From positions 193,167-257,166 of the IMG/VR virus record IMGVR_UViG_3300042455_001086: a stretch of DNA of 64,000 nucleotides. The stretch is one strand, 5' to 3'. The position numbers and the translations under genes are program-made. Numbering within the stretch: the first letter of the stretch is position 1; each line of letters opens with the position of its first letter. Positions 38,392-62,142 of this stretch are shown piece after piece. A model generated the notes under the pieces. That model had not been told where the DNA came from and did no database searches. It worked only from the letters and a program-made list of their open reading frames with translations.

Positions 38392-38460
38392 CGGTAAAAT
38401 ATATTTAATAGTTATGAGTATGTCTCTACAAATAAATATACGAAGATAATATAAAAAAAC

Positions 38461-38491
38461 AAAATCCCCCAAAAAAAATTTGAGGGATTTT
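38461..38491 (-). terminator. Terminator-like hairpin after sheath gene
   Basis: AAAATCCC.CAAA ... TTTG.GGGATTTT. Confidence 0.55.
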
Positions 38492-38514: not shown

Positions 38515-41500
38515 CTAAATATTATCAAAAGATGCACCAGTTGGTGTAATATAGAAGGTAATATCTATAAATTCTAACGAACGAGTTGGTTTAATATAGA
38601 TTTTACCAGTCAATTGATTTCTATCTAAATCAGCAGTATCACTTGACACCTCAACTCGGAAATCATATAGACCTCTATCTCTTCTAATAGCATCCAAGAT
38701 TGGATTAACCGCATTCAAGAAATCTTGTCTTACTTGTTCATCATTTTGGTCAAACAACAATCTTACAGAAACCGCTGAAATTAACTTACGAGCTTGTAAT
38801 AACAATCTTCTCACATTAATTCTATCAAGTGCGGATTCTCTAACTTGAAGGGTTTTGTTACCCCAGATTACAGTTCCAACATCAGCAAATGTTGCAATTG
38901 GGTTGATTCTACCAACATAAAGAACATCTCTATCTTCTTGAGTTAATTTCTTACGAGCTTTAACCGCATTTACAATACCACGAGTATAACCAGCTGCCGC
39001 AAACCAAGGGAATGCAATATTATCTGTAAGTGCCAAGTTTCTTGTAACCTCAGCCGTTGCTGGGATGTAAATTTGTGTATTATTTACAGTATCTCTTGTT
39101 AATACCCAAGGATAATATGTTGCAGTATAGTTAGAATCAATTCCAGTTTCTTCCAAATTATCAACAGCTTCTTGTGGATAAATTAAATTATCACCTTCAG
39201 TTGTTGATGCTACAAACATATTATAGTCTGGTGTTGTTGTAATGTATAATGAATCCGCTCTATCATTCTCAATCATATCAATAGTAGCTTCAACTAAATC
39301 ACTATTATTTACATAATCAATCCCTGGTGATACAAATACATTAATATTAACAGCTTCAGGATTAGCAAATGTTCTAATACCAAGTAAATACGCGTAGTAA
39401 TCGGTGTTTGCATAATCCATAGTCTGGTCACCAACGGCAATTTGTTTAAATGCACCCCATCCTTTAGCAGTTGGGTATCTGTCTGACACACAAGCACCAT
39501 TTAAGAATCCTTGACGACCTAATACAAATCTATCACCATTTGTTCTATATTCTCTATAAATATCCCAACCATCAAATCCACCATTAACAAATAAAGTGAA
39601 TTTTCTTGAGAATAATCTGTAATATGGACTATCTGGACTTGTAGGTTCAGAAGAGAATGCGGCCGCACCTACATAATATTTAGGAGTTCCACTTGTTGCA
39701 AATGCACTTGAAATTGTAATTCCACTTGCAAATTGATCCATATGGAAACCTTTCGTTTTGTATGACCATTCACCACCTTCCAAATCACAAGTTGAGATAG
39801 GTGCTCTTTTTCCTTTATATTCAAAGAAACTTGTGTCAAAACCAATATTACTTGACATACCAAGGTAAGTTTTTCTAATATTGTCACCAGAAGTTCTAAT
39901 TGCATCATCAGCACCTGAAGCCAAACCAAATGGTGGGTTATATATTACTTCACCTGGGAAATCATATTTGGTCTTATAAACTGGGAATGGAGATTTAACA
40001 CCAACATATTCTCTAAATACATAACCGTCAAATCCACAAGGAAGTGCATCAACTGGCGCATCTTCGTTCATTTCAACCATAATGTATTTAGAATTCATTT
40101 CAAATTCACCGTCTAATGTTCCGATTTTTTTAGCAATAAAGTTATTTTGTGATGGATCCATAGAACAGTTTGTAAATTTCTCAATAACAACCGGATTTGA
40201 ATCAACATCAAAATAATCCCTAACTAATACATCAAATGTTCTATTAGCAAATGAGATATTGATAATTGAGATTTTAACCTCACTATTTGCGGAATTACCA
40301 TCAGAAATAGTGTAGAACTTGAATAAGTTAAATGTTTTCGTACCTCTCAATTCTGATACAACCCAAGGAGATGATGGCGATTGGAATTTTTCTAAATACC
40401 AACCGATTGTATTTGGATCTTCACTTTGAGCCGAATCAAGGGCTGTAAGTTCAGCACTTAAACCTCTGATATAACCTTTTCTCCAACCATAATTTAATAA
40501 CGCTTGGAATCTTTCTTCCAAGAATAATGGAGTTGATGTTCTTGGTTTCCCAAAGTTAGTTCCACCAAATACTTTTGCGATATATTGTGAATCTGATTGA
40601 CTAAACGATGTTTCAAAAATAAAGTTAGTTCCAGAATCGTTTGTTACATTTACAGCAAATGGTAAATATGGGTTTTTAAGAACTCCAGAATATTGACCTG
40701 ACATATTAAGAGTAACATTTGAAATATCAGAAACTTCAAATACTGGATTATTTTCATCTGAATATGTTGCAATACCTCTTGATCTTAATGTTGCAACAAC
40801 CAAATCGTCATAATCTGTATATGTCACACCAGAATAATAATATAGTGTTCCTACTAACATACCTTCAAAACATCTAACATTTACTGGTATTGGAGTTGGT
40901 GCCGGTGTAGTAGTTGGAGTTGGTGTAATACAAGGATTTGTAGGTGTTGGTGTAGGTGTTGCACTCGGAGTAGGTGTAGGTGTCGGTACAATTGGGAAAA
41001 CTTCAGTTAAACCAGACACAAATGTGTAGAATGAAAACCCTGAATATAATCCATTATTTGTATTATTAAATAAAGCATAATACCAAGCATCATTAAATGG
41101 TGATGTATAATCCGTTAAATCACTTGATGGTGATGGAACATTAAATACATTTGTTTCAGCTGAATAACCAAGACTAACTAAACTATCATAGTCATCACCC
41201 CAAATTGAACCATAGTAGTTAATATTTCTAGTTTGAGCTGTAAGTGGATCTCCATTATCTGTAATAATATTAAAGATTTGATCTCTAATGTTAGTATCAA
41301 GTGTTGAAATTGAACCATCAAAGTTTTCGTATTGTTGTAATAAGAATTCATTGGTTAATGGACTAGGTAATGAGTCATATATGATACTATCTTCAGAATT
41401 AGTGCAAGCTGTAAATGGAACCATAAATGTAATTGCACTTGGTATAACACAAATAGTATCACACACATTATTCGGATCTGTTATTGCACTAAGACATAAG

Positions 41501-41868
41501 AAATCAACTGTTTTAGGATCAACATTTGCTTTGGTTACGATAGACCAAGATGGACCAGCGTCATAACCGGATAAACCCAATATTCTTGTAACAAATAATT
41601 GGTTTGATTGTTGTAAATATGCTTTTGCGATATAAGACGCTTCATATTTAGGAATTTGTGTATTCACAAATTTTTCTGGTGAAGTTCCACCAAAGTAGGT
41701 TTGGAATTCATCATAGTTTCTAATAAAAATTGGTTCAAAAGCAGGACCCTTTAAAGTCTCTCCTGCAATACCCAAAGTTGTAACACCAACACTTTGTGCA
41801 ACAAAGCTTAGATCAACTTCTGAAGTATAAACCCCTGGTGAAACAAATATTTTACTGTTAGTTGCCAT
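38515..41868 (-). CDS. Contractile tail sheath protein (gp18-like) with large insertion including a Pro/Thr tract
   Basis: FVSPGVYTSEVD, TYYPWV, PWFAAAGYTRG, INPIATF..VIWGNKTL..LDRINVRRL, IKPTRSLEFIDITF. Confidence 0.92.
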   Translation of the reverse strand: MATNSKIFVSPGVYTSEVDLSFVAQSVGVTTLGIAGETLKGPAFEPIFIRNYDEFQTYFGGTSPEKFVNTQIPKYEASYIAKAYLQQSNQLFVTRILGLSGYDAGPSWSIVTKANVDPKTVDFLCLSAITDPNNVCDTICVIPSAITFMVPFTACTNSEDSIIYDSLPSPLTNEFLLQQYENFDGSISTLDTNIRDQIFNIITDNGDPLTAQTRNINYYGSIWGDDYDSLVSLGYSAETNVFNVPSPSSDLTDYTSPFNDAWYYALFNNTNNGLYSGFSFYTFVSGLTEVFPIVPTPTPTPSATPTPTPTNPCITPTPTTTPAPTPIPVNVRCFEGMLVGTLYYYSGVTYTDYDDLVVATLRSRGIATYSDENNPVFEVSDISNVTLNMSGQYSGVLKNPYLPFAVNVTNDSGTNFIFETSFSQSDSQYIAKVFGGTNFGKPRTSTPLFLEERFQALLNYGWRKGYIRGLSAELTALDSAQSEDPNTIGWYLEKFQSPSSPWVVSELRGTKTFNLFKFYTISDGNSANSEVKISIINISFANRTFDVLVRDYFDVDSNPVVIEKFTNCSMDPSQNNFIAKKIGTLDGEFEMNSKYIMVEMNEDAPVDALPCGFDGYVFREYVGVKSPFPVYKTKYDFPGEVIYNPPFGLASGADDAIRTSGDNIRKTYLGMSSNIGFDTSFFEYKGKRAPISTCDLEGGEWSYKTKGFHMDQFASGITISSAFATSGTPKYYVGAAAFSSEPTSPDSPYYRLFSRKFTLFVNGGFDGWDIYREYRTNGDRFVLGRQGFLNGACVSDRYPTAKGWGAFKQIAVGDQTMDYANTDYYAYLLGIRTFANPEAVNINVFVSPGIDYVNNSDLVEATIDMIENDRADSLYITTTPDYNMFVASTTEGDNLIYPQEAVDNLEETGIDSNYTATYYPWVLTRDTVNNTQIYIPATAEVTRNLALTDNIAFPWFAAAGYTRGIVNAVKARKKLTQEDRDVLYVGRINPIATFADVGTVIWGNKTLQVRESALDRINVRRLLLQARKLISAVSVRLLFDQNDEQVRQDFLNAVNPILDAIRRDRGLYDFRVEVSSDTADLDRNQLTGKIYIKPTRSLEFIDITFYITPTGASFDNI
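40885..40996 (-). repeat. Mucin-like (PT)n tract in tail sheath
   Basis: PIVPTPTPTPSATPTPTPTNPCITPTPTTTPAPTPIP. Confidence 0.85.
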
Positions 41869-41902: not shown

Positions 41903-41952
41903 ATAAATATTGTGTTTTTTAGCAAAAACTTTACTTACATAAAACTATTTAT
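41903..41952. promoter_or_regulatory. Back-to-back TATTTAT motifs for sheath (minus) and RHH gene (plus); representative of a window-wide motif
   Basis: ATAAATA at 41903-41909 and TATTTAT at 41946-41952; same motif precedes about 20 genes. Confidence 0.6.
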
Positions 41953-46238: not shown

Positions 46239-48338
46239 ATGAAACTTACTGTAAAACATATTGATTCTGGTCTTGACCCACAAGACAAGAAAATGTATAA
46301 CGATTTTATTAAATTTATAAATTCAAAATATCCAGTCAATAAAGAACTCGAAATTTTATTTCTTGGTGAGAAAAATGGACATATGTCCACTGGGTCTCAA
46401 AATATGAACGGAGTTATTAAAGTCTTATCCAAAAATAGATTGAACCGTGATATAATGAGAACTCTAGCACACGAATGGGTTCATGCGCATCAAAGATTTG
46501 TTTTAGGTAGAGAAAGAGGTCCGGACATTGGTGGTCAAAATGAAGATGAAGCAAATGCTTTCGCTGGACAATTAATTAAAATGTTTGAAAAAGAATATCC
46601 AGACTATAATGAACTTGTTTTTGAACATTCAAAACCATTAATAAAAAAACTTGATCTTTTAAAAGAAGAAATTCTTAAAACAGAAAAACAAAATTTACAT
46701 AAAGAATTTATTACTGAAATGAAAAAAATTGGTATTGAAAAATTACCATATTCATATTCGGCTATGAAACAATTTGTTGATCCTAAAACAATGGACATTC
46801 ATTACAACAAACATTATAAAGGTTATGTTAAAAAATTAAACGCCGCATTATCAAACAAAAAAGGTGAAATGGAACTTGAGGATATTGTTAAGTCCATATC
46901 AAAATTTGACACAAAAGTAAGAAACAATGCTGGTGGGGCTTTTAACCATGCTTTATTTTGGAAAATGTTGTCACCAAAAAAACAAAAACCAAGCAAATCA
47001 ATTTTAGAAAAAATTAAAAAAGATTTTGGAAATTTAAAAAAATTAAAAGATGAATTTAATTTAATTGCCAAAGATGGTTTTGGTTCTGGTTGGGCTTGGT
47101 TAATTCTTACAAAAAATAATAAATTAAAAATAACTTTTACACCAAACCAAGATAATCCATTGATGGATGTTGTCAAAGGTGGTGGTTTTCCGTTACTAGG
47201 ACTTGATCTTTGGGAACATGCTTATTATTTAAAATATCAAAACAAAAGAGACGAATATATAAATAATTTTTGGAACTATATAAATTGGGATTTTGTTAAT
47301 GATTTATATGAAACGAAATCAAAAAAGAAATTAAACGAATCATTAAGAAAAATTATTGTTGAAAATGATACTATGGATTATGATTTAAAAAAGGCAATGA
47401 GTCGTGAATTACAAAAAATCAGACTTATACCCTTGGATGCCGAATCCGCATCAGAAGCAATTAAAAACATCATAACTGCCGAAACTTCAAGAGGTAATAT
47501 TGATTTTAATAGAACACTTGAAGGTCTTATGTCGCTTAATTTGAGTAATGTATCAGAAAGATCAAAATATAGATTTAATAATTATTTTCAAAGATTTGTA
47601 AAAAGTAAGTCAAGAGGTCTTGATTTTGAAGGTATGGTGGCCGGATTTTTAAATGGTGATCTAGCAACAAGTAATGTTTCACCATTCGATGTCTCAACAC
47701 CAGCTGGTGATAAAATTTCTTGTAAAATCGTTAGAAGTCAAAAAGAACGAATAACACTTAAAAGTATTAAAGAAACATTGGGTCAATATTTAGCCAACTA
47801 TTCTGGTTCTGAAGAAAACAAACAAGAATTGTTAAAGATGAGCCAACAACCAAATTTTCTTAGATTATTGGTAAATCACGAAAATCAAGATTTGAAAAAT
47901 CAAGCCGAAGATATATTGGAATTTTTACTTACAGACATCACCGGGTTGTTGGTTGGTATCCCAAATGAAACAAAAGTTGGAATTGATTTATATTATTATG
48001 ATAAAAATAAAATTATTGATCTTGTTAAAACACCTGGGTTATTAAATGCCGGAAGATCACCAGAAGCACAAACAATATCATTATCAACAAAAATACTTAG
48101 TGGTGATAAAACTATGTCTGGATTTATTCAGTTTCCAGTTTTAACAATGGATGATTATCAATCTTTTTTAATTGGTGATGAAAAAACAAAAGAAGTTTTA
48201 AATTTATTTAATCAACTTGGAAACAAATACGGTGTTCCAAGACTTGGAGACAATTTACCACAAGACATTATTATAGGTTTATCTAAAAATGAAAGATTCA
48301 AGTTAGATCTTAAAAAATTGGTAAATCCAATAAGGTAA
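46239..48338 (+). CDS. Three-domain fusion: zincin-like (HExxH) + Fe/Mn superoxide dismutase + putative PD-(D/E)xK-like domain
   Basis: AHEWVH..EDEANAFAG; KLPYSY, HYNKH, NHALFW, FGSGWAWL, NQDNP, DLWEHAYY; RGLDFEG..PFDV..KISCK. Confidence 0.8.
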   Translation: MKLTVKHIDSGLDPQDKKMYNDFIKFINSKYPVNKELEILFLGEKNGHMSTGSQNMNGVIKVLSKNRLNRDIMRTLAHEWVHAHQRFVLGRERGPDIGGQNEDEANAFAGQLIKMFEKEYPDYNELVFEHSKPLIKKLDLLKEEILKTEKQNLHKEFITEMKKIGIEKLPYSYSAMKQFVDPKTMDIHYNKHYKGYVKKLNAALSNKKGEMELEDIVKSISKFDTKVRNNAGGAFNHALFWKMLSPKKQKPSKSILEKIKKDFGNLKKLKDEFNLIAKDGFGSGWAWLILTKNNKLKITFTPNQDNPLMDVVKGGGFPLLGLDLWEHAYYLKYQNKRDEYINNFWNYINWDFVNDLYETKSKKKLNESLRKIIVENDTMDYDLKKAMSRELQKIRLIPLDAESASEAIKNIITAETSRGNIDFNRTLEGLMSLNLSNVSERSKYRFNNYFQRFVKSKSRGLDFEGMVAGFLNGDLATSNVSPFDVSTPAGDKISCKIVRSQKERITLKSIKETLGQYLANYSGSEENKQELLKMSQQPNFLRLLVNHENQDLKNQAEDILEFLLTDITGLLVGIPNETKVGIDLYYYDKNKIIDLVKTPGLLNAGRSPEAQTISLSTKILSGDKTMSGFIQFPVLTMDDYQSFLIGDEKTKEVLNLFNQLGNKYGVPRLGDNLPQDIIIGLSKNERFKLDLKKLVNPIR

Positions 48339-53091: not shown

Positions 53092-54672
53092 TTATGAATG
53101 TGTTATAATCCAGTTATATGGGGATCCGGTTAAAAAATTTCTTGCGGCAATTCCATCGTAACCACCTGAACTAGCATCTGGTGCGCCGTTTGTTCCCCCT
53201 ATTTTTAAATTAATATTTGACCATCCGGTCGGATTGTAAGTAGCGTTTCCACTAAAATCGACCAAAATGTGGTTTACATCAGAAGATGACATATTATTAT
53301 CATATAATCCAATAATAGGTCTCCCTTGTGTTGCCCCTGATATTAATGTGGCTCCTGATAATGGTTTAAAATCAACATAATCTAAATTACAGTCAAACAT
53401 TCTAAAAGCCGAGAACGAATCGTTATTACTAGTATTTCTAAAAAAAGTATTGACGTTAGGAAAAATAACATTAGTTAAATTATCATTACCGCTAACTTGG
53501 ATATACCCTGTCGAAGCGGAGCTTGACCCACCTAATTTTGTTAAATTTGTTAAATTCAAATTTCCGGTTAGGTTACAATTATTAGCCAAATAAGACGTAA
53601 AATTTTGTGATGATTGTGTATGCGTTATATTTGTTAAACCGGTATTATTATATATCGAAAAATTACCACCCAAACCTGATAATGGTGTTAAATCTAAATT
53701 TCCTGTTAAATTACAAGAATGCACAGAATAATTACTAAAATTTTGTGATGATTGTGTATGTGTAATACCAGTTAAATTGGAATTAGAATGAGCTTGAAAA
53801 TTACCACCCAATCCTGATAATGGTGTTAAATCTAAATTTCCTGTTAAATTACAAGAATACACAGAATAAGACGTAAAATTTCGTGATGATTGTGTATGTG
53901 TAATACCAGTTAAATTGGGATTACTATAAGATCTAAAATCACCACCCAAACCTGATAATGGCGTTAAATCTAAATTTCCTGTTAGGTTACAATTATTAGC
54001 CCAATATCTTGTAAAATTTTGTGATGATGGTGAATGTGTAATACCAGTTAAGTTTAAGTTATTATTAACATAAAATTCACCTCCCAAACCAGATAATGGT
54101 GTTAAATCTAAATTTCCTGTTAAATTACAAGAATACACAGAATAAGACGTAAAATTTCGTGATGATTGTGTATGTGTAATACCAGTTAAATTGGAATTAT
54201 TCTGAGTTTGAAAATCGCCACCCAAACCTGATAATGGTGTTAAATCTAAATTTCCTGTTAAATTACAAGAATACACAGAATAAGTACTAAAATTTTGTGA
54301 TGATGATGAATGTGTTATTCCTGTCAATCTTGGGTTATTTGAAACAATAAAAACCCCACCCAAACCTAATAATGGTGTTAAATCTAATTTACCATATATG
54401 TTATCATTAAATAAATTAAATCCATTAATGTTACTAAAACTATTACCTCTCATTTGAATGGTTCTAATTTCTGTGTCAGCAGAAAACCCACTATATGTGA
54501 TTGAATTTCCGGCTGTTTGTGTAATATTTGTCCCATTATTAAGTTTCCAAGAAACCCTTCTTGAACCACTACTAAATGTAACATCCGGATCAAATGATGT
54601 TGTTGACCCACTTTTTTGAAATGTCAGTACTTGACCTATATTATTTCTTGATGTAAATTGTTGCCTACTCAT
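53092..54672 (-). CDS. LRR-like solenoid protein (putative adhesin/receptor-binding)
   Basis: Six 46-aa tandem units GNLDLTPLSGLGGxFxxxxNxNLTGITHxxSSxNFxxYxxxxCNLT. Confidence 0.75.
   Translation of the reverse strand: MSRQQFTSRNNIGQVLTFQKSGSTTSFDPDVTFSSGSRRVSWKLNNGTNITQTAGNSITYSGFSADTEIRTIQMRGNSFSNINGFNLFNDNIYGKLDLTPLLGLGGVFIVSNNPRLTGITHSSSSQNFSTYSVYSCNLTGNLDLTPLSGLGGDFQTQNNSNLTGITHTQSSRNFTSYSVYSCNLTGNLDLTPLSGLGGEFYVNNNLNLTGITHSPSSQNFTRYWANNCNLTGNLDLTPLSGLGGDFRSYSNPNLTGITHTQSSRNFTSYSVYSCNLTGNLDLTPLSGLGGNFQAHSNSNLTGITHTQSSQNFSNYSVHSCNLTGNLDLTPLSGLGGNFSIYNNTGLTNITHTQSSQNFTSYLANNCNLTGNLNLTNLTKLGGSSSASTGYIQVSGNDNLTNVIFPNVNTFFRNTSNNDSFSAFRMFDCNLDYVDFKPLSGATLISGATQGRPIIGLYDNNMSSSDVNHILVDFSGNATYNPTGWSNINLKIGGTNGAPDASSGGYDGIAARNFLTGSPYNWIITHS
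53560..54395 (-). repeat. 138-bp tandem coding repeat, about 6 copies
   Basis: aatctaaatttcctgtta recurs at 53691, 53829, 53967, 54105, 54243. Confidence 0.9.
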
Positions 54673-55581: not shown

Positions 55582-55606
55582 AATTTTTTTTTATAAATAC
55601 TTGTTT

Positions 55607-56734
55607 TTATGAAGATATTTCTGTCGCAAAGCAAATTTCTCCTTTTTCTCTAATTAATCTTTCCATATCATTGAAGGAAATATAAGCTGTGCCATTTATA
55701 CCCCAACTTCTACCCCAACTATTTTTCATTCTAAATATTCTTTTTCTTGTGTCAACACCATTTATCACATAGGCATGACCTCCAAGTAAAGGACCACCAA
55801 TTCTTATATTTCCATTTCTATCTGGAAAGAACATATTTCTATACCAATTTGTCCCAACCACTACCGGTCCAATATTTAAAACAGAATCAATTAATGTTTG
55901 AAGTGTATAACCCCAATAATAATTTCTTACCTTACCTACTTGTTGTAGATATTTTACACCACCCCTTACCGAAGTTCCATTATAGTTTTCACCTGGCCAT
56001 TCATCAAGTTTTTGAGCGTTTTCATAAATTATTTTAGGTTGAATGATTGGCGCAACACCTGGTTGTCCAATTGGACCGTCTTCCAACCAATGAGCCCAAG
56101 AAAAACCAACACAATGCGGTGTATTTCCTTGATTTCCCCACCATCCATTATCATCCCAATATCTTGATGTTATTGTCACCCTTGATCTTGATGAGGTTAA
56201 AAGGTGGTTTTCAATTAAATAATTATTATCCCGTTCATCTGGCTTATGTGTTCTACCAAGTGGAAATTCTGTTTCGACAACTGTTGTTGTTGCTGTTACT
56301 GGAATAACTGGTGTTGAAACACAACAAGGAAATTCTGAAACATAACAACTTTCATATGGTAAATCATCACCTATAAAACTTTCTTGGATATTAATATATA
56401 ATTTTTCTCTTATCGGTAAAATTAAAACACCCTCGTTCTCGGTTCTAAATAAAAACTGACCTTCAAATCTCCCAACCTTATTTGTGTCTTTTGACTGGAA
56501 TTGGTAATAAACATAATACTCAACCGGAGCATTTGGATCCGTAAATTCTTTTTTTGTGAAACCAGCCGGCCTTGTCACTATTTTTGGAATTCCGGTTTCA
56601 ACATCTGACATTGAAAAGAATATTGCTGATTCCTCAATGAAATTCATAAAACTATTGTAGTCACTTCTACCGTCTTTTACCACTTGAATTTTTAACAATG
56701 GTAATGTTGCGTTCTTTTTAATATAAAATTCCAT
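55607..56734 (-). CDS. BppU-like N-terminal domain fused to papain-family (C1A) cysteine peptidase
   Basis: NQGNTPHCVGFS (Gln, Cys), GGHAYVI (His), KNSWG..WG (Asn); N-term FYIKKNATLP..YQFQSKDT..GRFEGQF. Confidence 0.75.
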   Translation of the reverse strand: MEFYIKKNATLPLLKIQVVKDGRSDYNSFMNFIEESAIFFSMSDVETGIPKIVTRPAGFTKKEFTDPNAPVEYYVYYQFQSKDTNKVGRFEGQFLFRTENEGVLILPIREKLYINIQESFIGDDLPYESCYVSEFPCCVSTPVIPVTATTTVVETEFPLGRTHKPDERDNNYLIENHLLTSSRSRVTITSRYWDDNGWWGNQGNTPHCVGFSWAHWLEDGPIGQPGVAPIIQPKIIYENAQKLDEWPGENYNGTSVRGGVKYLQQVGKVRNYYWGYTLQTLIDSVLNIGPVVVGTNWYRNMFFPDRNGNIRIGGPLLGGHAYVINGVDTRKRIFRMKNSWGRSWGINGTAYISFNDMERLIREKGEICFATEISS

Positions 56735-56764
56735 TTATTGTTTTTACAATAAATATTAGTTTTC

Positions 56765-57862
56765 CTATAATATAATTTCTTCTTTACATTTTTTTAATGC
56801 ACATTCTATTACTTGGTGCATATCATAGTATTTATATTCCGCCAATCTACCACCAAAAATTATATTTTCTTCTTTGTCGGCTAATGTTTTATACTGACTA
56901 TATTTGAAATTGTTTTCTTGATCATTGACAGGATAATAAGGTTCTGTTTTTTTTGCTGAATAGTCTGTTGGATATTCCCAACTAACCCAACTCACATTTG
57001 ATTCGGTTTTTTCAAAATGTTTATGTTCTATAATTCTCGTAAATGAAACTTCGGAATCCGTGAAGTTCATCATAGCACACCCTTGATAATTCTCAGTTTC
57101 AAATTTCTTGTGATTAAATTCTGTTGTTTTATATTCCAATTCTCCAAATTTATAGTTATAGAAAGCATCTATTGGACCTGTGTATATTATTTTTTTTGTA
57201 ACTGAATTCCAATATTCTTTATCCGATAAGTAATCCACATTTAATTTTACCTCAATTCCATCTAATAATTTTTCAAATATTTGGGTATAACCACCTATTG
57301 GTATTCCTTGATACTTGTCATTAAAATAATTATTATCGTATGTAAATCTAACTGGTAGTCTTTTTATTATTTCTTTTGGTAATAATCTAGGATCTTTTTT
57401 CCATTGTTTAGTTGTATAACCTTTTATTAGTTTTTCATAAACATCTCTACCAACCAACTTTATGGCTTGTTCTTCCAAGTTTTTTGGTTCTATAATTTCA
57501 CTACCTTGTTCTTCTATTATTTTTTTTGCTTCACTTGGTTGTGTAATATTCCATAATTTTGAGAATGTCCACATATTAAAAGGTAATGAGTAAATTTCAT
57601 TTTTATAATTTGCAACAGCTCTTAGTGTGAAATCATTGAAGGAAACGAATTGATTTATCCATTCCCAAACTTCATCATTAGAGGTGTGAAAAATGTGGGG
57701 ACCATAATCGTGAACATTAATACCATCTCTGTTAGATGTATAGCAATTTCCACCAATGTGGTTGCGTTTTTCTAATACTAAACAATTATATCCTTTTTTT
57801 GTAAGTTCGTGAGCACAAATAGAACCGAAAAATCCAGAACCAACAATTATATAATCATACAT
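56765..57862 (-). CDS. glf: UDP-galactopyranose mutase
   Basis: GSGFFG, HIGGNC, HDYGPHIFHT, YQGIP, EPYYP, GRLAEYKYYDMHQVI. Confidence 0.95.
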   Translation of the reverse strand: MYDYIIVGSGFFGSICAHELTKKGYNCLVLEKRNHIGGNCYTSNRDGINVHDYGPHIFHTSNDEVWEWINQFVSFNDFTLRAVANYKNEIYSLPFNMWTFSKLWNITQPSEAKKIIEEQGSEIIEPKNLEEQAIKLVGRDVYEKLIKGYTTKQWKKDPRLLPKEIIKRLPVRFTYDNNYFNDKYQGIPIGGYTQIFEKLLDGIEVKLNVDYLSDKEYWNSVTKKIIYTGPIDAFYNYKFGELEYKTTEFNHKKFETENYQGCAMMNFTDSEVSFTRIIEHKHFEKTESNVSWVSWEYPTDYSAKKTEPYYPVNDQENNFKYSQYKTLADKEENIIFGGRLAEYKYYDMHQVIECALKKCKEEIIL

Positions 57863-57865
57863 AAA

Positions 57866-58555
57866 TTATTTTCTTATAAAGTGATAATCAGCATCAGGAC
57901 CATTACCACAAAAATATTTATTATTACTTTTATTTGAAACAAGCTCGAAACCTAAAGATTCTATAAAGGGAATTGATTCATCTATTTTTTTAGCACCTAA
58001 ATTATATTCAACATGTTGTAATTCCACAATCATATGTTTAACATTTTTGAGTGTTTCTTTCATTCCTTTTAAAATATCAATTTCGGCACCTTGAACATCA
58101 ATTTTCACAAAGTCAGGTAATCTGAATTTTTGATTAAATACAATAGTGTCTATTTTTTTTGTCAGTCTTATTTCATAAGATTTTTCATCATATATGTTTT
58201 TAGCCGCGGGAGAAAAAATTTCATTTTCTTTATAATAAGAATTACCACCCAAATAAAGTGGGTGATTATAAAATATTAATTCTTTATCGTCCATATCACT
58301 AAAAACATTCAAAGAAAATGTAGAACCATATTCCAAATAAAATTCTTCAACTTGTAAAACTGCTTCAAAATTATAATATATTGAATTAGACCATATTTTT
58401 TTAGCCTCTTTAGTCCAATGAAGAACCGCAGAACCTATGTCATAAATAACTTTAGGATAGTAATCAATTGATTTCAGGTACTCAATATGTTGAATTGGGA
58501 TACTAGAATCATTATGTAATCTCCAATAGTAATCTGTGTAATCTCTATTACCCAT
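57866..58555 (-). CDS. FkbM-family SAM-dependent methyltransferase
   Basis: IYDIGS, FEA, DFVKIDVQGAEIDILKG, IVEL. Confidence 0.85.
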   Translation of the reverse strand: MGNRDYTDYYWRLHNDSSIPIQHIEYLKSIDYYPKVIYDIGSAVLHWTKEAKKIWSNSIYYNFEAVLQVEEFYLEYGSTFSLNVFSDMDDKELIFYNHPLYLGGNSYYKENEIFSPAAKNIYDEKSYEIRLTKKIDTIVFNQKFRLPDFVKIDVQGAEIDILKGMKETLKNVKHMIVELQHVEYNLGAKKIDESIPFIESLGFELVSNKSNNKYFCGNGPDADYHFIRK

Positions 58556-59729
58556 TCAATAAACTATTAATAAAATTTGTCCACATATCTCCTACTTTAT
58601 TTTTGTTGAATTTTTCTAAAATATAATCTTTTCCATTTTCTATTATTTTATTTTTAAATTCTGGATTTTCTTCTAAAAAATTTACTTTGGATACGATATT
58701 ATCAGAATATTTAAAAATACCATCAATGTCTTTTGATAAAGGTTCGTTTTGCATCTTATTTGGGTCTGAACCCGGAGGAAAATTCAACCAAGCGCAATAC
58801 CCATCAAAATTTTCAGGTAAAGCACCTAATGGATATGTCACCGGAATACAACCTAACGCAATAGCTTCTGCAACAACACAAGAAAAAGTGTCTTTATGAA
58901 CATCTTGATATGGTGTATATAGAGGATAAATAAAATATTCACTTTCGGCCAAATGTGTAAATAATGTTTTTTTATCCACACTATTATGTAGTTTAAAAAA
59001 AGAATCTGAATGTGCGTGTGTTGCCAATAAATAATCAAAGGCGTGGAATTCACAATCCTTGAAATTTAATTTTCTAACCGCTTCCACCGCAACATCACCA
59101 CCTCTTGCCCATGCTGCATGAAAAATAAATTTATGTTTTTTCTTTTTTGGGTTATTTAATAATACTTCATTTATTACATCATCCATTATTGGGTTTGGTA
59201 TTATTGTTGAAATTGTATCTTTACAATTATTTAATAAACTATTAACCACATTTTGGTTCATTTTTTTCTCCCATTCAGATATATTCACAATGCCTAATTT
59301 TAAATTATTGGTATTTACAAAATCAATGATTTCACCCACCCCATATATCCATTGCATATGAGACCAATAAATTAAACCTTTTGAAATTTTGATTGGGATA
59401 TTTTTATAATCAACAAACCATAAACTACTTACTAATATGTCAAATTCTTTGTTTGGTACATTAGTGAAATGTATATCAGTATAACACACGCCTCTTACAT
59501 TCTTTCCAGGTTCAAAACCCAACCCTAATGATTCTAATTTTTTATCTAAATGAGGTTCTAATCTTTCTGATGCAAACACAACTTCATGTCCTTGACTTGC
59601 AAGATATTCGGCAATTAAAATAGAACTTGTATCAGTTCCAGATCCTCCACCACCACCATATCTTAATGTTTCACCATTCAAGTAATTACTTCTTCTACTA
59701 TTTCCTATGACTATAAATGCTATTCTCAT
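58548..59729 (-). CDS. GT-B glycosyltransferase (GT4-like)
   Basis: GGGSGTD..LASQGHEV, DTFSCVVAEAIALGCIPVTYPLGALPE. Confidence 0.8.
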   Translation of the reverse strand: MRIAFIVIGNSRRSNYLNGETLRYGGGGGSGTDTSSILIAEYLASQGHEVVFASERLEPHLDKKLESLGLGFEPGKNVRGVCYTDIHFTNVPNKEFDILVSSLWFVDYKNIPIKISKGLIYWSHMQWIYGVGEIIDFVNTNNLKLGIVNISEWEKKMNQNVVNSLLNNCKDTISTIIPNPIMDDVINEVLLNNPKKKKHKFIFHAAWARGGDVAVEAVRKLNFKDCEFHAFDYLLATHAHSDSFFKLHNSVDKKTLFTHLAESEYFIYPLYTPYQDVHKDTFSCVVAEAIALGCIPVTYPLGALPENFDGYCAWLNFPPGSDPNKMQNEPLSKDIDGIFKYSDNIVSKVNFLEENPEFKNKIIENGKDYILEKFNKNKVGDMWTNFINSLLNG

Positions 59730-60976
59730 ACTATTATTTTTTCATATCTATCACTCCATTGTTTTTCTTCATCGAAGAGATACATAATTATTTTATTTGG
59801 TCTATCCGCTGATTCAAAAAAAGCTCTAAATTTGTTTATTTCTAGATTAACATATTGAGGGTCGTTTTCTAATGTAAAATCTCTTCTATATAGTTCAGCA
59901 CCACTACTATTTGCAACCGCAAAAGTTAAAAACCTTTTATTTATAAAATTATACTTTTTGAAAAAATTTAAATCCCAATCTACCTCAAAATTATACACAT
60001 TTTTGATAAATTGGTTTTCCCAATCAATAGGATTTGGTGGTTCTTTAACTTTTAGAGTATAGTCTTGGATTATACATTTTTTAAAATCAAATCCTCCATA
60101 AACTTCATAATCGTGTAAAGTTCTTTTATTACCCAAACAATAAATACCCATATCAATATCACCCTCATCAGTTCCAAAAAGTTGTCTTGTCTTTTCTCTA
60201 GCAAAAACATCTCTTTGTCCACTGGTTTTTTGTGTTTTACTTTCCTTACCGTGATCTTCCCAATGCTTCGGTCTGTAATTTCTTGTATATTCATGCCACA
60301 TAACCATTCTATATGGACTAAAAAAGTCATAACCATTTGTATATGCTCTAGCACTTAGTGTTGTTTCCTCAACATAACCACCAAAATAAATATCAGGATC
60401 ATATGGTACTTCTTCGATAAATTTTCCATATGTAAAATAAAAATGTCCACTTATTGTTCTTGCTCTAATTATTTTGTCTCTTTCTTTATAATCTTGAATA
60501 TACCAAGGCATTGACATTAAAAGTTTGTCAGAACTAAACTCATATTGAGACATTAATGTTGGTGTTTTATTCCACTTATCTTTATCTTCATTCGGATCAA
60601 ATGGTGTGCAATATGTTGTAATAATAGGTTTTTCGGACACTTCTAATGCTTGATTAAAATCCTCCAAGACAATTTCATCCCAATTTTCAACAAACCTATG
60701 ATGTGAGTCGATTTGTAATGTATATTTTTCTCCACCATATAGTAAATTTGTCACATTTCTAGCCCAACCTAAACCTTGACTTTCTGAATAGTGATATTTT
60801 TTAATCCTAAAATTTGGATTACTATCATATTTAGTAATATCTTCGGTTTCATCGTATTGCCAACAAATCCCAAAAATTAAATTTTCTGGGTGTTTAGCTT
60901 TTTTTAACATATCCTCAATTGTTGGTATAAGCTGGGGATCTCTATAACTTGCGATTTGAACGAAAATTTTATCCAT
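59726..60976 (-). CDS. GT60-like polypeptide/hydroxyproline GlcNAc transferase (GlcNAc, Skp1 Gnt1 type)
   Basis: IFVQIASYRDP, GLGWAR, EKYTLQIDSHHRF..NWD, EVPYDP..FGG..EE..RAYTNGYD..P..WHEY. Confidence 0.8.
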   Translation of the reverse strand: MDKIFVQIASYRDPQLIPTIEDMLKKAKHPENLIFGICWQYDETEDITKYDSNPNFRIKKYHYSESQGLGWARNVTNLLYGGEKYTLQIDSHHRFVENWDEIVLEDFNQALEVSEKPIITTYCTPFDPNEDKDKWNKTPTLMSQYEFSSDKLLMSMPWYIQDYKERDKIIRARTISGHFYFTYGKFIEEVPYDPDIYFGGYVEETTLSARAYTNGYDFFSPYRMVMWHEYTRNYRPKHWEDHGKESKTQKTSGQRDVFAREKTRQLFGTDEGDIDMGIYCLGNKRTLHDYEVYGGFDFKKCIIQDYTLKVKEPPNPIDWENQFIKNVYNFEVDWDLNFFKKYNFINKRFLTFAVANSSGAELYRRDFTLENDPQYVNLEINKFRAFFESADRPNKIIMYLFDEEKQWSDRYEKIIV

Positions 60977-61061
60977 ATATAATTTTTTAATAAAAAAATA
61001 TGGAATAAAATAAAAAGTTGAATGGTTAAATAATTATTATTTTATATAACACCCACCGAAA

Positions 61062-61095
61062 AAACCCACAAATCTTTAGTTCGTGAGTGGTTCAA
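61062..61095 (+). mobile_element. Degenerate solo IS200/IS605-type right end
   Basis: AAACCCACAAA-TCTTTAG-TTCGTGAGTGGTTCAA has the same loop and GTTCA end as the element at 43947-43980. Confidence 0.45.
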
Positions 61096-61110
61096 TAAGT
61101 TGATTTTGAT

Positions 61111-62142
61111 TTAACAACCATCTGTCCTTATTATACATCCGGTTGAAATATTATAAGTAAAGGTTCCTAAACATTGTGGTGTTCGTGGTATTGCACATTG
61201 TTGGACTACTAATAATGGTGGTAATGGGAATGTGTATGTGGCGACTAAAGAACCGCCGACATTTGTAAATCCATAATTACCATCGGAAACCATTGTTCCG
61301 CCGGAATAAACATACATAGCAAGATTAATAACACCAGTTCCTAAGCTTGTATACCAATGGGCTTTTGCTGTAAATTGAATTGTTGGTGCTGAAGGAAATG
61401 CCGTTTTAATATCATTTACTTTAAAATACACCGATTCACTTCCACCTGAGCTTGTATTATCGCCACCCCAATACATATAAGGACCACTAGGAGTAGAACT
61501 ATAGCAAAAACCTAAAGGCCCATTTATTGTTGGTTGTGTTAAAGTTGTTACAGTATCTAAGTCCACCCCCGAACCAGATGGAAATTCATAAACAAAGACT
61601 AAATAATCACCAAGAGCACAAATAGGTGCTACTGGTGTTGGTGTTGGTGTTGGAGGACAAGTTGGTGTTGGACAAAATTGGTTTGAACTACAAGGATCGC
61701 CAATTGTTATTGTAAGATTTGTTTCATTTGTTGGGTTTGAACCACAAGTATAATATGTTATACCACTTTGAATTATAACATCCAAAACATTATTACCATT
61801 ACAATCAGTATAATCAAATGAACCATTGTTTGTTGATGTGTTATCAGCTGTAATACACCTACATAGACTTGTTGGAGTTGGTGTAGGTGTTGCGGTTGGT
61901 GTTGGAGTAGGTGTAGGTGTTGTTGGACAAGAATAATGTTGGAAAGTTTCACAACCATCGTCATCACTTACAATAACAATAACTGAATTTGCAACATCTA
62001 AAGGGGCTGGAACATTAAAAGTGTATGGGACTGAACTAAATGTTCCTGGAACATTAAAACAATTTGTTATTGATATATTACAAACTTGAGCCTGATATGG
62101 CGCATTACCCGTTACTCCTGTTATTGTTATTTGGTGTGGCAT
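61111..62142 (-). CDS. Cys-rich multidomain protein with mucin-like (PT)n linkers
   Basis: CPTTPTPTPTPTATPTPTPTS and CPTPTCPPTPTPTP separating three Cys-containing beta domains. Confidence 0.7.
   Translation of the reverse strand: MPHQITITGVTGNAPYQAQVCNISITNCFNVPGTFSSVPYTFNVPAPLDVANSVIVIVSDDDGCETFQHYSCPTTPTPTPTPTATPTPTPTSLCRCITADNTSTNNGSFDYTDCNGNNVLDVIIQSGITYYTCGSNPTNETNLTITIGDPCSSNQFCPTPTCPPTPTPTPVAPICALGDYLVFVYEFPSGSGVDLDTVTTLTQPTINGPLGFCYSSTPSGPYMYWGGDNTSSGGSESVYFKVNDIKTAFPSAPTIQFTAKAHWYTSLGTGVINLAMYVYSGGTMVSDGNYGFTNVGGSLVATYTFPLPPLLVVQQCAIPRTPQCLGTFTYNISTGCIIRTDGC

What the first reader, a model, noticed from the sequence alone, without database searches (positions are those of the whole stretch)
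56765..62142. Candidate phage-encoded mucin-type O-glycosylation system for the virion
Seen: four tightly coupled genes (GT60-like GlcNAc transferase with DSH motif, GT4, FkbM methyltransferase, UDP-Galp mutase) sit among fibre/adhesin genes, directly downstream of a Cys-rich protein with (PT)n linkers; the tail sheath carries a similar (PT)n insert. Established: GT60 enzymes are relatives of GT27 polypeptide GalNAc transferases and put alpha-GlcNAc on hydroxyproline (Dictyostelium Skp1) or on Thr of Thr/Pro-rich mucins (Trypanosoma cruzi, whose mucin glycans can carry Galf). Glf makes UDP-Galf. Inference: the phage initiates GlcNAc-O-Thr glycans on its own PT tracts, extends and O-methylates them, and so builds a eukaryote-like mucin coat (protease/grazer shielding, adhesion or stiffened linkers).
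Basis: partly seen in the sequence, partly recalled or inferred. Interest (0 to 1): 0.88.

Follow-up and report, generated by a model that had tools for sequence, protein, structure and literature searches.

The report
Phage mucin-type O-glycosylation gene cassette
A freshwater jumbo phage carries a four-gene sugar-adding cassette whose lead enzyme resembles the enzymes that start mucin glycosylation in eukaryotes, and in phages and bacteria this enzyme's gene sits next to genes for proteins with threonine/proline-rich tracts, so the phage probably sugar-coats its own tail proteins, though no experiment shows this yet.

Summary
Four translationally coupled minus-strand genes (GT60-like PF11397 with an invariant D90-S-H92, a GT4-like GT-B enzyme, an FkbM methyltransferase, UDP-galactopyranose mutase) lie just downstream of a Cys-rich PT-tract protein, and the tail sheath has a PT insert. 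"Fibre/adhesin" for the flanking genes could not be verified.

- The GT60-like model's 40 best PDB fold matches are all polypeptide GalNAc-transferases.
- In 114 phage loci, Thr/Ser/Pro-tract proteins of unrelated families lie immediately beside the GT60-like gene about 2.6 times more often than within-locus chance (p≤0.0002). 40 are upstream against 2 downstream, and 41 of 42 are on the same strand.
- In bacterial chromosomes the same enrichment holds (17/267 within two genes, 1/616 beyond).
- The sheath insert is conserved in all 80 relatives examined. It is always Thr-rich, and some variants are poly-Thr like the T. cruzi GT60 acceptor peptide.
- XacN1, a cultured phage with a homolog, has reported virion glycoproteins.

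Main rivals: DNA glycosylation (a C5-methylase is present, but no TET or hydroxymethylase was found), host-glycan modification, and hydroxyproline as the acceptor. The donor sugar, the enzyme that uses UDP-Galf and the acceptor proteins are untested.

Verdict: a new variant of virus-encoded virion glycosylation.

The parts
59726..60976 (-). GT60-like (PF11397) retaining GT-A glycosyltransferase, predicted to initiate polypeptide O-glycosylation. GT-A domain at aa 1 to about 300, plus a C-terminal beta-sandwich at about aa 320-416.
   Evidence: Pfam E 2.4e-61. Invariant D90, H92 and H228. Model pLDDT 93.8. The 40 best PDB fold matches are all GT27 ppGalNAc-Ts. No hydrophobic segment.
58548..59729 (-). 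GT4-like GT-B glycosyltransferase, the near-invariant partner directly downstream of the GT60-like gene. Predicted to add the second sugar.
   Evidence: Adjacent to the GT60-like gene in 47 of 50 close loci. GT-B model with best matches MshA, BshA, PimA and PglA. Pfam hits are sub-threshold.
57866..58555 (-). FkbM-family SAM methyltransferase, predicted to O-methylate a sugar.
   Evidence: PF05050 E 2e-12 and TIGR01444. Present in 12 of 50 close loci. Other methyltransferases take its place in other loci.
56765..57862 (-). UDP-galactopyranose mutase (Glf), which makes UDP-Galf.
   Evidence: TIGR00031 equivalog at 415.6 bits, above the cut-off. Present in 36 of 50 close loci, downstream of the GT pair.
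61111..62142 (-). 343-aa Cys-rich protein with two PT tracts (aa 72-92 and 160-180), the candidate acceptor protein encoded directly upstream of the cassette.
   Evidence: The C-terminal domain matches phrog_24956, of unknown function. Conserved only in near-identical contigs.
61064..61088 (-). Terminator-like hairpin followed by a T-run, between the PT/Cys gene and the GT60-like gene.
   Evidence: This is a consensus match only.
38515..41868 (-). Tail sheath (1117 aa) with a hypervariable Thr/Pro-rich insert at aa about 291-331 (window about 40876-40998) bracketed by conserved Cys residues. Candidate acceptor on the virion surface.
   Evidence: phrog_23 E 6e-56. The insert is present in all 80 relatives examined, with mean 38% Thr and 26% Pro against 8% and 4.6% in the rest of the protein. 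Some variants are poly-Thr.

Best explanation
The four genes form a cytoplasmic glycan-building cassette that O-glycosylates threonine-rich (PT-repeat or poly-Thr) tracts of the phage's own proteins. The likely targets include the surface-exposed insert of the tail sheath and the PT/Cys protein encoded just upstream.

Proposed order of events:
1. The soluble, Mn2+-dependent, retaining GT60-like enzyme transfers the first sugar from a UDP-sugar to Thr hydroxyls in the tracts. By family analogy the sugar is alpha-GlcNAc.
2. The GT4-like enzyme adds a second sugar.
3. Glf supplies UDP-Galf for a galactofuranose residue. The transferase that uses it is not identified.
4. FkbM O-methylates a sugar.

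Relatives swap in extra GT25, GT11, DUF3431 and methyltransferase genes, so the glycan differs between phage lineages.

Shown here: the family and fold assignments, the operon structure, the genomic association with tract proteins, and the conservation of the Thr-rich sheath insert.

Inferred: the acceptor, the donor sugars, the order of steps and the biological benefit.
For: 1. Family. PF11397 at E 2.4e-61. DxH replaces DxD, as is specific to GT27 and GT60 (PMC7185993), and here D90-S-H92 is invariant together with H228 as a candidate C-His.

2. Fold. The 40 best PDB matches are all polypeptide GalNAc-transferases.

3. Characterised GT60 enzymes are polypeptide O-GlcNAc transferases (PMC8724618). 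The T. cruzi enzyme needs Mn2+ and uses KPPTTTTTTTTKPP as acceptor, and its glycans carry beta-Galf on the GlcNAc (PMC3769586).

4. Association in close phage relatives. PT-tract proteins occupy position -1 in 13 of 35 contexts, against 4 of 281 at four or more genes away.

5. Association over 114 phage loci. A cluster-weighted permutation gives 6.9 observed against 2.7 expected, p<=0.0002. 40 tract genes are upstream and 2 downstream, and 41 of 42 are on the same strand. On the 112-row GT60 tree the label needs at least 10 changes.

6. With the tracts masked, the tract proteins fall into at least 9 unrelated families.

7. Association in bacterial chromosomes of several phyla: 17 of 267 within two genes, against 1 of 616 beyond, p=1.3e-8.

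8. Sheath insert. It is present in 80 of 80 relatives, always Thr-rich while Pro varies from 13% to 42%, and some variants are poly-Thr.

9. All four enzymes lack hydrophobic segments, and no flippase, polymerase or priming transferase is present.

10. XacN1 encodes a 35%-identical homolog, and at least two virion glycoproteins were reported for it (PMC5852040). Its giant baseplate-adjacent protein carries PT tracts.
Against: - There is no direct evidence that any protein is glycosylated.
- About half of the phage loci show no tract protein within 10 kb, for example the L006/L007 clade.
- After strict dereplication of the distant set alone the signal is weak (4 of 25, p=0.04).
- The PT/Cys gene is separated from the cassette by a terminator-like hairpin and is not conserved in relatives.
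- Neither GT60 nor GT4 is a family known to me (from general knowledge) to transfer Galf, so the link between Glf and these two GTs is unexplained.
- Prokaryotic GT60-like enzymes have never been characterised.
- Neither the single sequence nor the family profile gave a significant sequence match to any solved structure, so the relation to structurally characterised enzymes rests on the Pfam model and the predicted fold.
- Phage-encoded UGM has been proposed to serve DNA hypermodification elsewhere (PMC13326640).
Confidence: 0.6

Rival explanations
1. The cassette glycosylates phage DNA. A reactive base such as 5hmC or 5-hydroxycytosine is decorated by the two GTs with a glycan containing Galf and a methylated sugar, which protects the genome from host nucleases.
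For: Phage GT clusters that put mono- to trisaccharides on 5hmC are known, and they include GT-B enzymes resembling MshA and BshA, the same best matches as the GT4-like protein here. A phage-encoded UGM has been proposed to supply UDP-Galf for DNA hypermodification in the Pootjesviridae (PMC13326640). The window encodes a C5 cytosine DNA methylase at 11842-13926. The cassette lies 3.8 kb from the DNA polymerase gene. In XacN1 the homolog lies near polymerase and RNaseH genes.
Against: Pfam found no TET/JBP/5mYOX or ThyS-like hydroxymethylase in the window ORFs or in the conserved neighbours of the tract-free clade, whereas such pathways are usually compact. Known DNA-modifying GT-A enzymes resemble JGT and TarP and have an R...DDD...EDY/F motif. 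This enzyme has DxH...H and matches ppGalNAc-Ts first. This rival does not explain the same-strand, upstream position of tract proteins in phages or the same association in bacterial chromosomes. The other 193 kb of the genome were not examined.
Confidence: 0.1
2. The cassette remodels a host cell-envelope glycan (LPS/LOS core, capsule, or a host glycoprotein or S-layer) during infection, for example to block superinfection or prevent progeny from being trapped. The PT-tract neighbours would then be only linker-rich fibre proteins that share a variable genome region with it.
For: GT25, GT11, GT4, Glf and FkbM are typical of LPS/LOS and O-antigen loci. The island's content varies as surface-glycan loci do. 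Half of the loci have no tract protein nearby. Peripheral LOS glycosyltransferases need no transmembrane segment (general knowledge).
Against: No priming phosphoglycosyl transferase, flippase, polymerase or ABC exporter is present in any island examined. All enzymes are predicted soluble. The lead enzyme's family and fold point to polypeptide acceptors. The tract-protein adjacency is directional (40 upstream, 2 downstream; 41 of 42 same strand), involves unrelated protein families, and recurs in bacterial chromosomes where there is no tail-fibre module.
Confidence: 0.13
3. The acceptor residue is hydroxyproline rather than threonine. A prolyl 4-hydroxylase, from the host or encoded elsewhere in the phage, hydroxylates Pro in the PT tracts, and the GT60-like enzyme adds GlcNAc to Hyp as in the Skp1 (PhyA-Gnt1) pathway.
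For: The founding GT60 enzyme, Gnt1, modifies Hyp (papers and the Pfam family description). A bacterial giant homolog, P0121, fuses four GT60-like domains with 2OG-Fe(II) oxygenase domains. Most tracts are rich in Pro.
Against: Pfam found no 2OG-Fe(II) oxygenase in the window ORFs, and the recurrent island genes scanned, including c11 and c48, gave no such hit. Sheath-insert variants are poly-Thr with as little as 13% Pro, while Thr stays at 24% or more. The T. cruzi GT60 enzyme uses Thr.
Confidence: 0.08
4. The tracts are unmodified flexible or stiff linkers, and their co-location with the glycosyltransferases is a by-product of shared ancestry of a few syntenic blocks.
For: PT linkers are common spacers between domains. 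Much of the phage signal comes from a few clades.
Against: The label needs at least 10 changes on the GT60 tree. The cluster-weighted permutation gives p<=0.0002. The tract proteins are non-homologous outside their tracts. An independent bacterial data set shows the same pattern. Poly-Thr is not a typical linker composition (general knowledge).
Confidence: 0.07

Closest known systems
GT60 polypeptide alpha-GlcNAc transferases of protists (T. cruzi pp-alpha-GlcNAcT, Dictyostelium mucin-type enzymes, and Gnt1 of the Skp1 pathway)
   Same: Same Pfam family (PF11397). DxH motif plus a candidate C-terminal His. Predicted GT-A fold closest to GT27. Thr-rich/Pro-flanked candidate acceptors like the T. 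cruzi peptide KPPTTTTTTTTKPP. A UDP-Galf source encoded alongside, which parallels beta-Galf on GlcNAc in T. cruzi core-2 glycans.
   Different: Encoded by a bacteriophage and predicted cytoplasmic, whereas the T. cruzi enzyme is in the Golgi. It has an extra C-terminal beta-sandwich domain. Sequence searches of solved structures gave no significant match, so no structurally characterised relative is detectable by sequence. Activity, donor and acceptor are untested.
Mycobacteriophage virion glycosylation (Freeman et al. 2023, as cited in PMC12619734)
   Same: Phage-encoded glycosyltransferases are proposed to decorate the phage's own structural proteins with O-linked glycans.
   Different: There the glycans sit at the C-termini of capsid and tail-tube subunits. 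Here the candidate sites are internal mucin-like PT or poly-Thr tracts in the tail sheath and in modular proteins, the lead enzyme is GT60-like, and the hosts are probably Gram-negative freshwater bacteria. The original paper was not held in the library, so enzyme families could not be compared.
Chlorovirus PBCV-1 and giant-virus capsid or fibril glycosylation
   Same: Virus-encoded, cytoplasmic, ER/Golgi-independent glycosylation of virion proteins using soluble GTs and methyltransferases. PF11397-like folds also occur in Megaviridae and Pandoravirus.
   Different: Those are eukaryotic viruses. From general knowledge, PBCV-1 glycans are N-linked to the capsid protein at atypical sites rather than O-linked to Thr tracts.
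Phage DNA glycan hypermodification clusters (Pyle et al. 2024; glycosylated 5-hydroxycytosine, NAR 2026)
   Same: Multi-GT phage cassettes. Their GT-B members resemble MshA and BshA. A UGM is proposed as UDP-Galf supplier in the Pootjesviridae.
   Different: Those clusters sit beside a 5mYOX/TET or ThyS-like enzyme, and their GT-A members resemble JGT and TarP with a DDD motif. Neither holds here.
Serine-rich-repeat glycoprotein (SRRP) glycosylation in streptococci (GtfA/B, Gtf3, GtfC)
   Same: Cytoplasmic, sequential O-glycosylation of long Ser/Thr-rich repeats by soluble GTs encoded next to the substrate gene. Gtf3 and GtfC appear among the fold matches of the GT4-like protein (ranks 46-48).
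   Different: From general knowledge, the SRRP initiating enzyme is a GT-B (GT4) O-GlcNAc transferase rather than a GT-A GT60 enzyme, and the substrates are bacterial adhesins exported by an accessory Sec system.

Membership tests
GT60 / Pfam PF11397 (polypeptide alpha-GlcNAc transferases) | Significant match to the family profile above the curated threshold | tested here: met
   208.6 bits against a cut-off of 21, E 2.4e-61.
GT60 / Pfam PF11397 (polypeptide alpha-GlcNAc transferases) | DxH in place of the DxD metal-binding motif (shared only with GT27), plus a C-terminal His ligand | tested here: met
   D90-S91-H92, with D90 and H92 invariant in 40 sequences. H228 is invariant. Motif definition from PMC7185993. 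The three-dimensional clustering of the three residues could not be measured because no coordinates were available.
GT60 / Pfam PF11397 (polypeptide alpha-GlcNAc transferases) | GT-A fold closest to the GT27 ppGalNAc-T catalytic domain | tested here: met
   Model pLDDT 93.8. PDB fold matches ranked 1-40 are all GT27 enzymes, E down to 6e-11, TM about 0.45-0.5 over the catalytic domain.
GT60 / Pfam PF11397 (polypeptide alpha-GlcNAc transferases) | Transfers alpha-GlcNAc from UDP-GlcNAc to Thr/Ser or Hyp of a polypeptide | not testable with these tools
   Only indirect support: genomic adjacency to Thr/Pro-tract proteins.
GT4 (retaining GT-B glycosyltransferases) | Profile match above threshold | tested here: not met
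   PF13692 at 19.5 bits and PF00534 at 18.4 bits, both below cut-offs of about 27. No NCBIfam hit.
GT4 (retaining GT-B glycosyltransferases) | GT-B two-Rossmann fold closest to GT4 structures | tested here: met
   pLDDT 89.9, pTM 0.91. Best matches are MshA, BA1558, BshA, PimA and PglA, E about 1e-10. It is therefore called 'GT4-like'.
UDP-galactopyranose mutase (Glf) | Equivalog-level profile match with an FAD-binding N-terminus | tested here: met
   TIGR00031 at 415.6 bits against a cut-off of 303.75. PF03275 and NAD_binding_8 also match.
FkbM methyltransferase family | Profile match above threshold | tested here: met
   PF05050 at 47.8 bits against 22.7. TIGR01444 at 43.9 bits against 37.7.
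Phage DNA sugar-hypermodification cluster | The GT is clustered with an enzyme that makes the reactive base (5mYOX/TET, or a ThyS-like hydroxymethylase or hydroxylase) | tested here: not met
   Pfam found none in the window ORFs or among the conserved neighbours of the L006 clade. A C5-methylase lies 45 kb away. The remaining 193 kb of the genome were not searched.
Und-P-dependent surface polysaccharide locus | Priming phosphoglycosyl transferase plus a flippase/polymerase or ABC exporter, with membrane-associated enzymes | tested here: not met
   No such families in the window cassette or the annotated island clusters. No hydrophobic segments in the four enzymes.

The most novel reading that the evidence does not exclude
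Prokaryotic and phage GT60-like enzymes form a widespread, so far unrecognised cytoplasmic mucin-type O-glycosylation system. It targets PT and poly-Thr tracts encoded next to the enzyme gene. Freshwater jumbo phages would use it to coat the tail sheath and fibre-like proteins with lineage-specific, Galf-containing, methylated glycans. Many bacteria (Acidobacteriota, Verrucomicrobiota and others) would use it on Tat- or lipoprotein-type exported proteins. This would place the origin of the GT27/GT60 mucin-initiating machinery of eukaryotes in prokaryotes and their viruses.
Probability: 0.4. Interest if true: 0.85.

Novelty: new variant of a known kind. Interest (0 to 1): 0.72.

Why it matters
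Glycosylation of phage virions by the phage's own enzymes has been demonstrated only in mycobacteriophages, to my knowledge, where it affects immune recognition. If this cassette works as proposed:

- An abundant group of freshwater jumbo phages decorates a contractile tail with mucin-like glycans. The GT60-like protein has thousands of homologs, the sheath has 483 relatives in IMG/VR, and the window DNA occurs in at least 20 lake or pond metagenomes.
- The glycan would affect virion stability, adsorption, resistance to proteases and particle stickiness in the water column.
- The enzyme family that starts mucin-type glycosylation in protists would gain a function in prokaryotes.
- There would be a simple genomic rule (a GT60-like gene beside a PT or poly-Thr tract gene) for finding substrates in phages and bacteria.
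- XacN1 would be a ready experimental system, because it is cultured, encodes a homolog and has reported virion glycoproteins.

Tried and rejected
- Megablast of the region against cultured phages found nothing.
- Sequence and profile searches of the GT60-like and GT4-like proteins against PDB gave no significant match. Only fold search worked.
- The T4 late-promoter octamer TATAAATA, tried as an expression-timing test, is not enriched (17 found, 14.6 expected). The motif that is present, RTATTTAT, precedes genes of all classes, so it cannot separate early from late genes.
- No RNA sequencing run was listed for the locus.
- Pfam and Atlas searches of the PT-tract proteins gave nothing.
- Island genes c11 and c48 could not be identified by Pfam or by a PDB profile search. 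The only clue is an invariant DxD-like motif in each.
- Genome-wide co-occurrence of the sheath insert and the GT pair could not be tested. Only 10-kb flanks can be fetched, and the two result lists share just three contigs.
- Whether the phage is a 'moraphage' (PMC12619734) could not be settled.
- Freeman et al. 2023 is not held in the library.
- Model coordinates are not exposed, so the metal-site geometry was not measured.
- The Pfam BAAT hit of the 526-aa repeat protein was rejected as spurious, because no stretch passes the threshold.

Full report
**What is there**

The window is the last 64 kb of a 257-kb IMG/VR contig. The contig belongs to a T4-like jumbo myovirus with about 30% GC. 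Its genes include a gp18-like sheath, gp19-like tube, gp25, gp32, baseplate wedge proteins, a B-family polymerase, a DnaB-like helicase and a ribonucleotide reductase. No cultured phage is close. The same DNA is present in at least 20 lake, pond and freshwater metagenomes.

At 56765-60976 on the minus strand lie four genes:
- a PF11397 'GlcNAc' (GT60) glycosyltransferase, E 2.4e-61;
- a 393-aa protein with only sub-threshold GT1/GT4 hits;
- an FkbM methyltransferase;
- an equivalog-level UDP-galactopyranose mutase.

The four are tightly coupled, with a 4-nt overlap, an 8-nt overlap and a 3-nt gap. The next gene downstream has its own promoter-like motif.

Directly upstream, after a terminator-like hairpin, is a 343-aa protein with 5% Cys and two PT tracts. 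The 1117-aa tail sheath, 19 kb away, has a PT-rich insert. These are the only two proteins in the window with strict (PT)3+ tracts. The exception is the 'fibre/adhesin' label for the flanking ORFs, which have no detectable homologs.

**The enzymes**

A 40-sequence alignment of the GT60-like protein has invariant D90, H92 and H228. DxH in place of DxD, together with a C-terminal His, is the signature shared by GT27 and GT60 (PMC7185993).

The AlphaFold model is confident (pLDDT 93.8, pTM 0.82). It shows a GT-A domain followed by a beta-sandwich at about aa 320-416. Its 40 best Foldseek matches in the PDB are all polypeptide GalNAc-transferases, and TarS appears only at rank 41. In the viral structure library the nearest matches are auto-annotated 'Glycosyltransferase, GlcNAc' proteins of uncultured Caudovirales, Megaviridae and Pandoravirus.

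The partner protein models as a GT-B fold closest to the retaining GT4 enzymes MshA, BshA, PimA and PglA. Gtf3 and GtfC of the streptococcal serine-rich-repeat pathway appear lower in the list. Because its Pfam scores are below threshold, I call it GT4-like.

None of the four enzymes has a hydrophobic segment.

**Relatives**

The GT60-like protein has 3886 homologs in the clustered database. The best 120 are all more than 70% identical, on contigs of up to 293 kb. At 50% clustering there are 4305 representatives.

In 50 IMG/VR loci from close relatives:
- the GT60-like and GT4-like genes are adjacent in 47;
- Glf follows in 36;
- FkbM follows in 12;
- the space between is filled variably with GT25, GT11, further FkbM or SAM methyltransferases, DUF3431 and two unannotated genes with DxD-like motifs.

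So the cassette is an expandable glycan-synthesis island built around a constant pair. No flippase, polymerase or priming transferase was seen.

In the close set, PT-tract proteins occupy position -1 in 13 of 35 dereplicated contexts, against 4 of 281 at four or more genes away. They are strongly mucin-like, for example a 978-aa protein with 19 PT blocks. With the tracts masked they fall into at least nine unrelated families.

A second scan with the family profile added 68 loci, 59 of them at 47% identity or less. Strict dereplication of those 59 alone gives a weak result (4 of 25, p=0.04), so the signal is concentrated in certain clades.

Over all phage loci the picture is clearer:
- On the 112-row GT60 tree the adjacency label needs at least 10 changes.
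- A cluster-weighted within-locus permutation over 114 loci gives 6.9 observed against 2.7 expected at 70% clustering, with p<=0.0002 at all three thresholds tried.
- 40 tract genes are upstream and 2 downstream, and 41 of 42 are on the same strand as the GT gene.

A third, independent data set comes from 78 bacterial chromosomal loci in Acidobacteriota, Verrucomicrobiota, Actinomycetota, Bacteroidota and Proteobacteria. There, T/S/P-tract ORFs make up 17 of 267 genes within two positions of the GT60-like gene, and 1 of 616 further away (p=1.3e-8). Many have Tat- or lipoprotein-like N-termini followed by a PT linker.

About half of the phage loci have no tract protein within 10 kb. The particular PT/Cys gene of this window is conserved only in near-identical contigs.

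**The sheath**

The sheath has 483 relatives in IMG/VR. All 80 fetched (72-100% identity) have a 36-42-aa hypervariable segment at the same position, bracketed by two conserved Cys residues.
- Thr averages 38% (range 24-58%) and Pro 26% (13-42%), against 8% and 4.6% in the rest of the protein.
- Some lineages replace the PT repeats with runs of seven to nine Thr.
- Residue conservation is lower inside the segment than outside (0.65 against 0.84).

What is conserved is threonine-richness, not proline or any particular sequence. That fits an O-glycan acceptor better than a spacer. The T. cruzi GT60 enzyme is assayed on KPPTTTTTTTTKPP, needs Mn2+, and its product GlcNAc-alpha-Thr is extended with beta-Galf in 'core 2' glycans (PMC3769586). 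That matches the combination of a GT60-like enzyme and Glf here. That the insert is surface-exposed is my inference, drawn from its position in the non-conserved middle of a gp18-like sheath.

**Cultured phages**

Only four cultured phages encode a homolog, at about 34-35% identity: Xanthomonas phages XacN1 and Xoo-sp13, and Stenotrophomonas phages CM1 and RAS14.

The authors of XacN1 detected at least two virion glycoproteins and suggested that the phage's own GTs make them (PMC5852040). In XacN1 and Xoo-sp13 the gene lies next to a carbamoyltransferase. About 9 kb away, a roughly 3,300-aa protein beside the baseplate wedge gene carries PT tracts.

**Rivals**

DNA glycosylation is the most serious rival.
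- For it: multi-GT phage clusters that glycosylate 5hmC exist, their GT-B members also resemble MshA and BshA, and a phage UGM has been proposed to feed Galf into DNA modification. The window also has an intein-split C5 methylase.
- Against it: those pathways are usually compact and sit beside a TET/5mYOX or ThyS-like enzyme. None was found in the window or in the conserved neighbours of the tract-free clade. The known DNA-modifying GT-A enzymes have a different motif and different nearest structures. This rival does not explain the directional tract-protein association or its recurrence in bacteria.

Host-envelope remodelling fits the GT25, GT11 and Glf content, but the cassette has no export or priming genes and no membrane enzymes.

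Hydroxyproline as the acceptor is suggested by a bacterial giant protein that fuses four GT60-like domains to 2OG-Fe(II) oxygenase domains. No such oxygenase was found here, and the poly-Thr sheath variants argue for Thr.

**Unexplained**

Which enzyme uses UDP-Galf is not known. To my knowledge neither GT60 nor GT4 is a family with characterised Galf-transferases. The role of the GT60-like protein's C-terminal beta-sandwich is also unknown.

**Verdict**

The anatomy is confirmed. The interpretation that the phage O-glycosylates its own Thr/Pro-rich tracts is the best-supported reading, at about 0.6. It rests on family, fold and three comparative data sets, plus one published hint from XacN1. 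The specific chemistry is inferred by analogy only. I found no paper that links GT60-like enzymes of phages or bacteria to PT tracts. I rate it a new variant of a known kind, namely virus-encoded virion glycosylation.

Noticed in passing
window 11842-13926 (-): A C-5 cytosine DNA methylase interrupted by an intein with a LAGLIDADG homing-endonuclease domain. It matters for the DNA-modification rival, but no TET or hydroxymethylase partner was found.
   Followed up: partly
window 32065-33648 (-), 34284-35900 (+), 36868-38472 (-): Three paralogous 527-538-aa proteins with DUF7487 plus a Mom-like domain, which PHROGs call HNH/homing endonucleases. They are interleaved with the tail tube and sheath genes, and one is on the opposite strand in a low-GC stretch.
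   Followed up: no
window 46239-48338 (+): A 699-aa protein with a complete Fe/Mn superoxide dismutase (both domains, aa 166-355) embedded in a larger protein of unknown function.
   Followed up: no
window, many intergenic regions (e.g. 41903-41910, 55593-55600, 56749-56756, all minus strand): The motif RTATTTAT lies 10-45 nt upstream of the start codons of structural and replication genes alike. There are 36 matches against 26 expected, and about 16 are intergenic and correctly oriented. It is a candidate general phage promoter element, and none lies directly upstream of the GT60-like gene.
   Followed up: partly
window 55607-56734 (-): The gene directly downstream of Glf encodes a 375-aa protein with a C-terminal papain-like (C1) peptidase domain (phrog_16701, E 3e-57) after a Thr/Val-rich linker.
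   Followed up: no
window 53092-54672 (-): A 526-aa protein made of about eight tandem repeats of roughly 45 aa (…NLTGNLDLTPLSGLGG…), LRR-like and 11% Thr. Its Pfam BAAT hit is spurious.
   Followed up: no
L204:10001-17386 (bacterial contig, protein P0121): A 2461-aa bacterial protein with four tandem GT60-like domains fused to 2OG-Fe(II) oxygenase (prolyl-hydroxylase-like) and AhpC-TSA domains, in a housekeeping chromosomal context. It may be a single-polypeptide version of a hydroxylation-plus-glycosylation pathway.
   Followed up: partly
L237, L254, L257, L266, L268, L269, L283, L285 (Acidobacteriaceae chromosomes), 1-2 genes from the GT60-like gene: A conserved family of proteins of about 320-355 aa, with a Tat-like RRSF motif, a lipobox-like Cys and then a PT or poly-Thr-Pro linker, encoded beside bacterial GT60-like genes.
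   Followed up: partly
L202:371-10312 (XacN1 ORF325) and L203:373-10110 (Xoo-sp13_296): Giant 3,313-aa and 3,245-aa proteins next to the baseplate wedge gene carry PT/ST tracts near aa 3060-3160, about 9 kb from the GT60-like gene, which is itself flanked by a carbamoyltransferase.
   Followed up: partly
window 16954-23679 (-) and 23994-29045 (-): Two very large ORFs (2241 and 1683 aa). The 1683-aa one has no Pfam match. The 2241-aa one was not scanned. They may be giant structural proteins.
   Followed up: no
L206 and L207 (genome contigs): The two closest 'bacterial' matches (69% and 53% identity) are short contigs binned into a Planctomycetota MAG and a pond Cryomorphaceae (Flavobacteriales) MAG. 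They are probably phage contigs, so they give at best a weak hint about the host.
   Followed up: no
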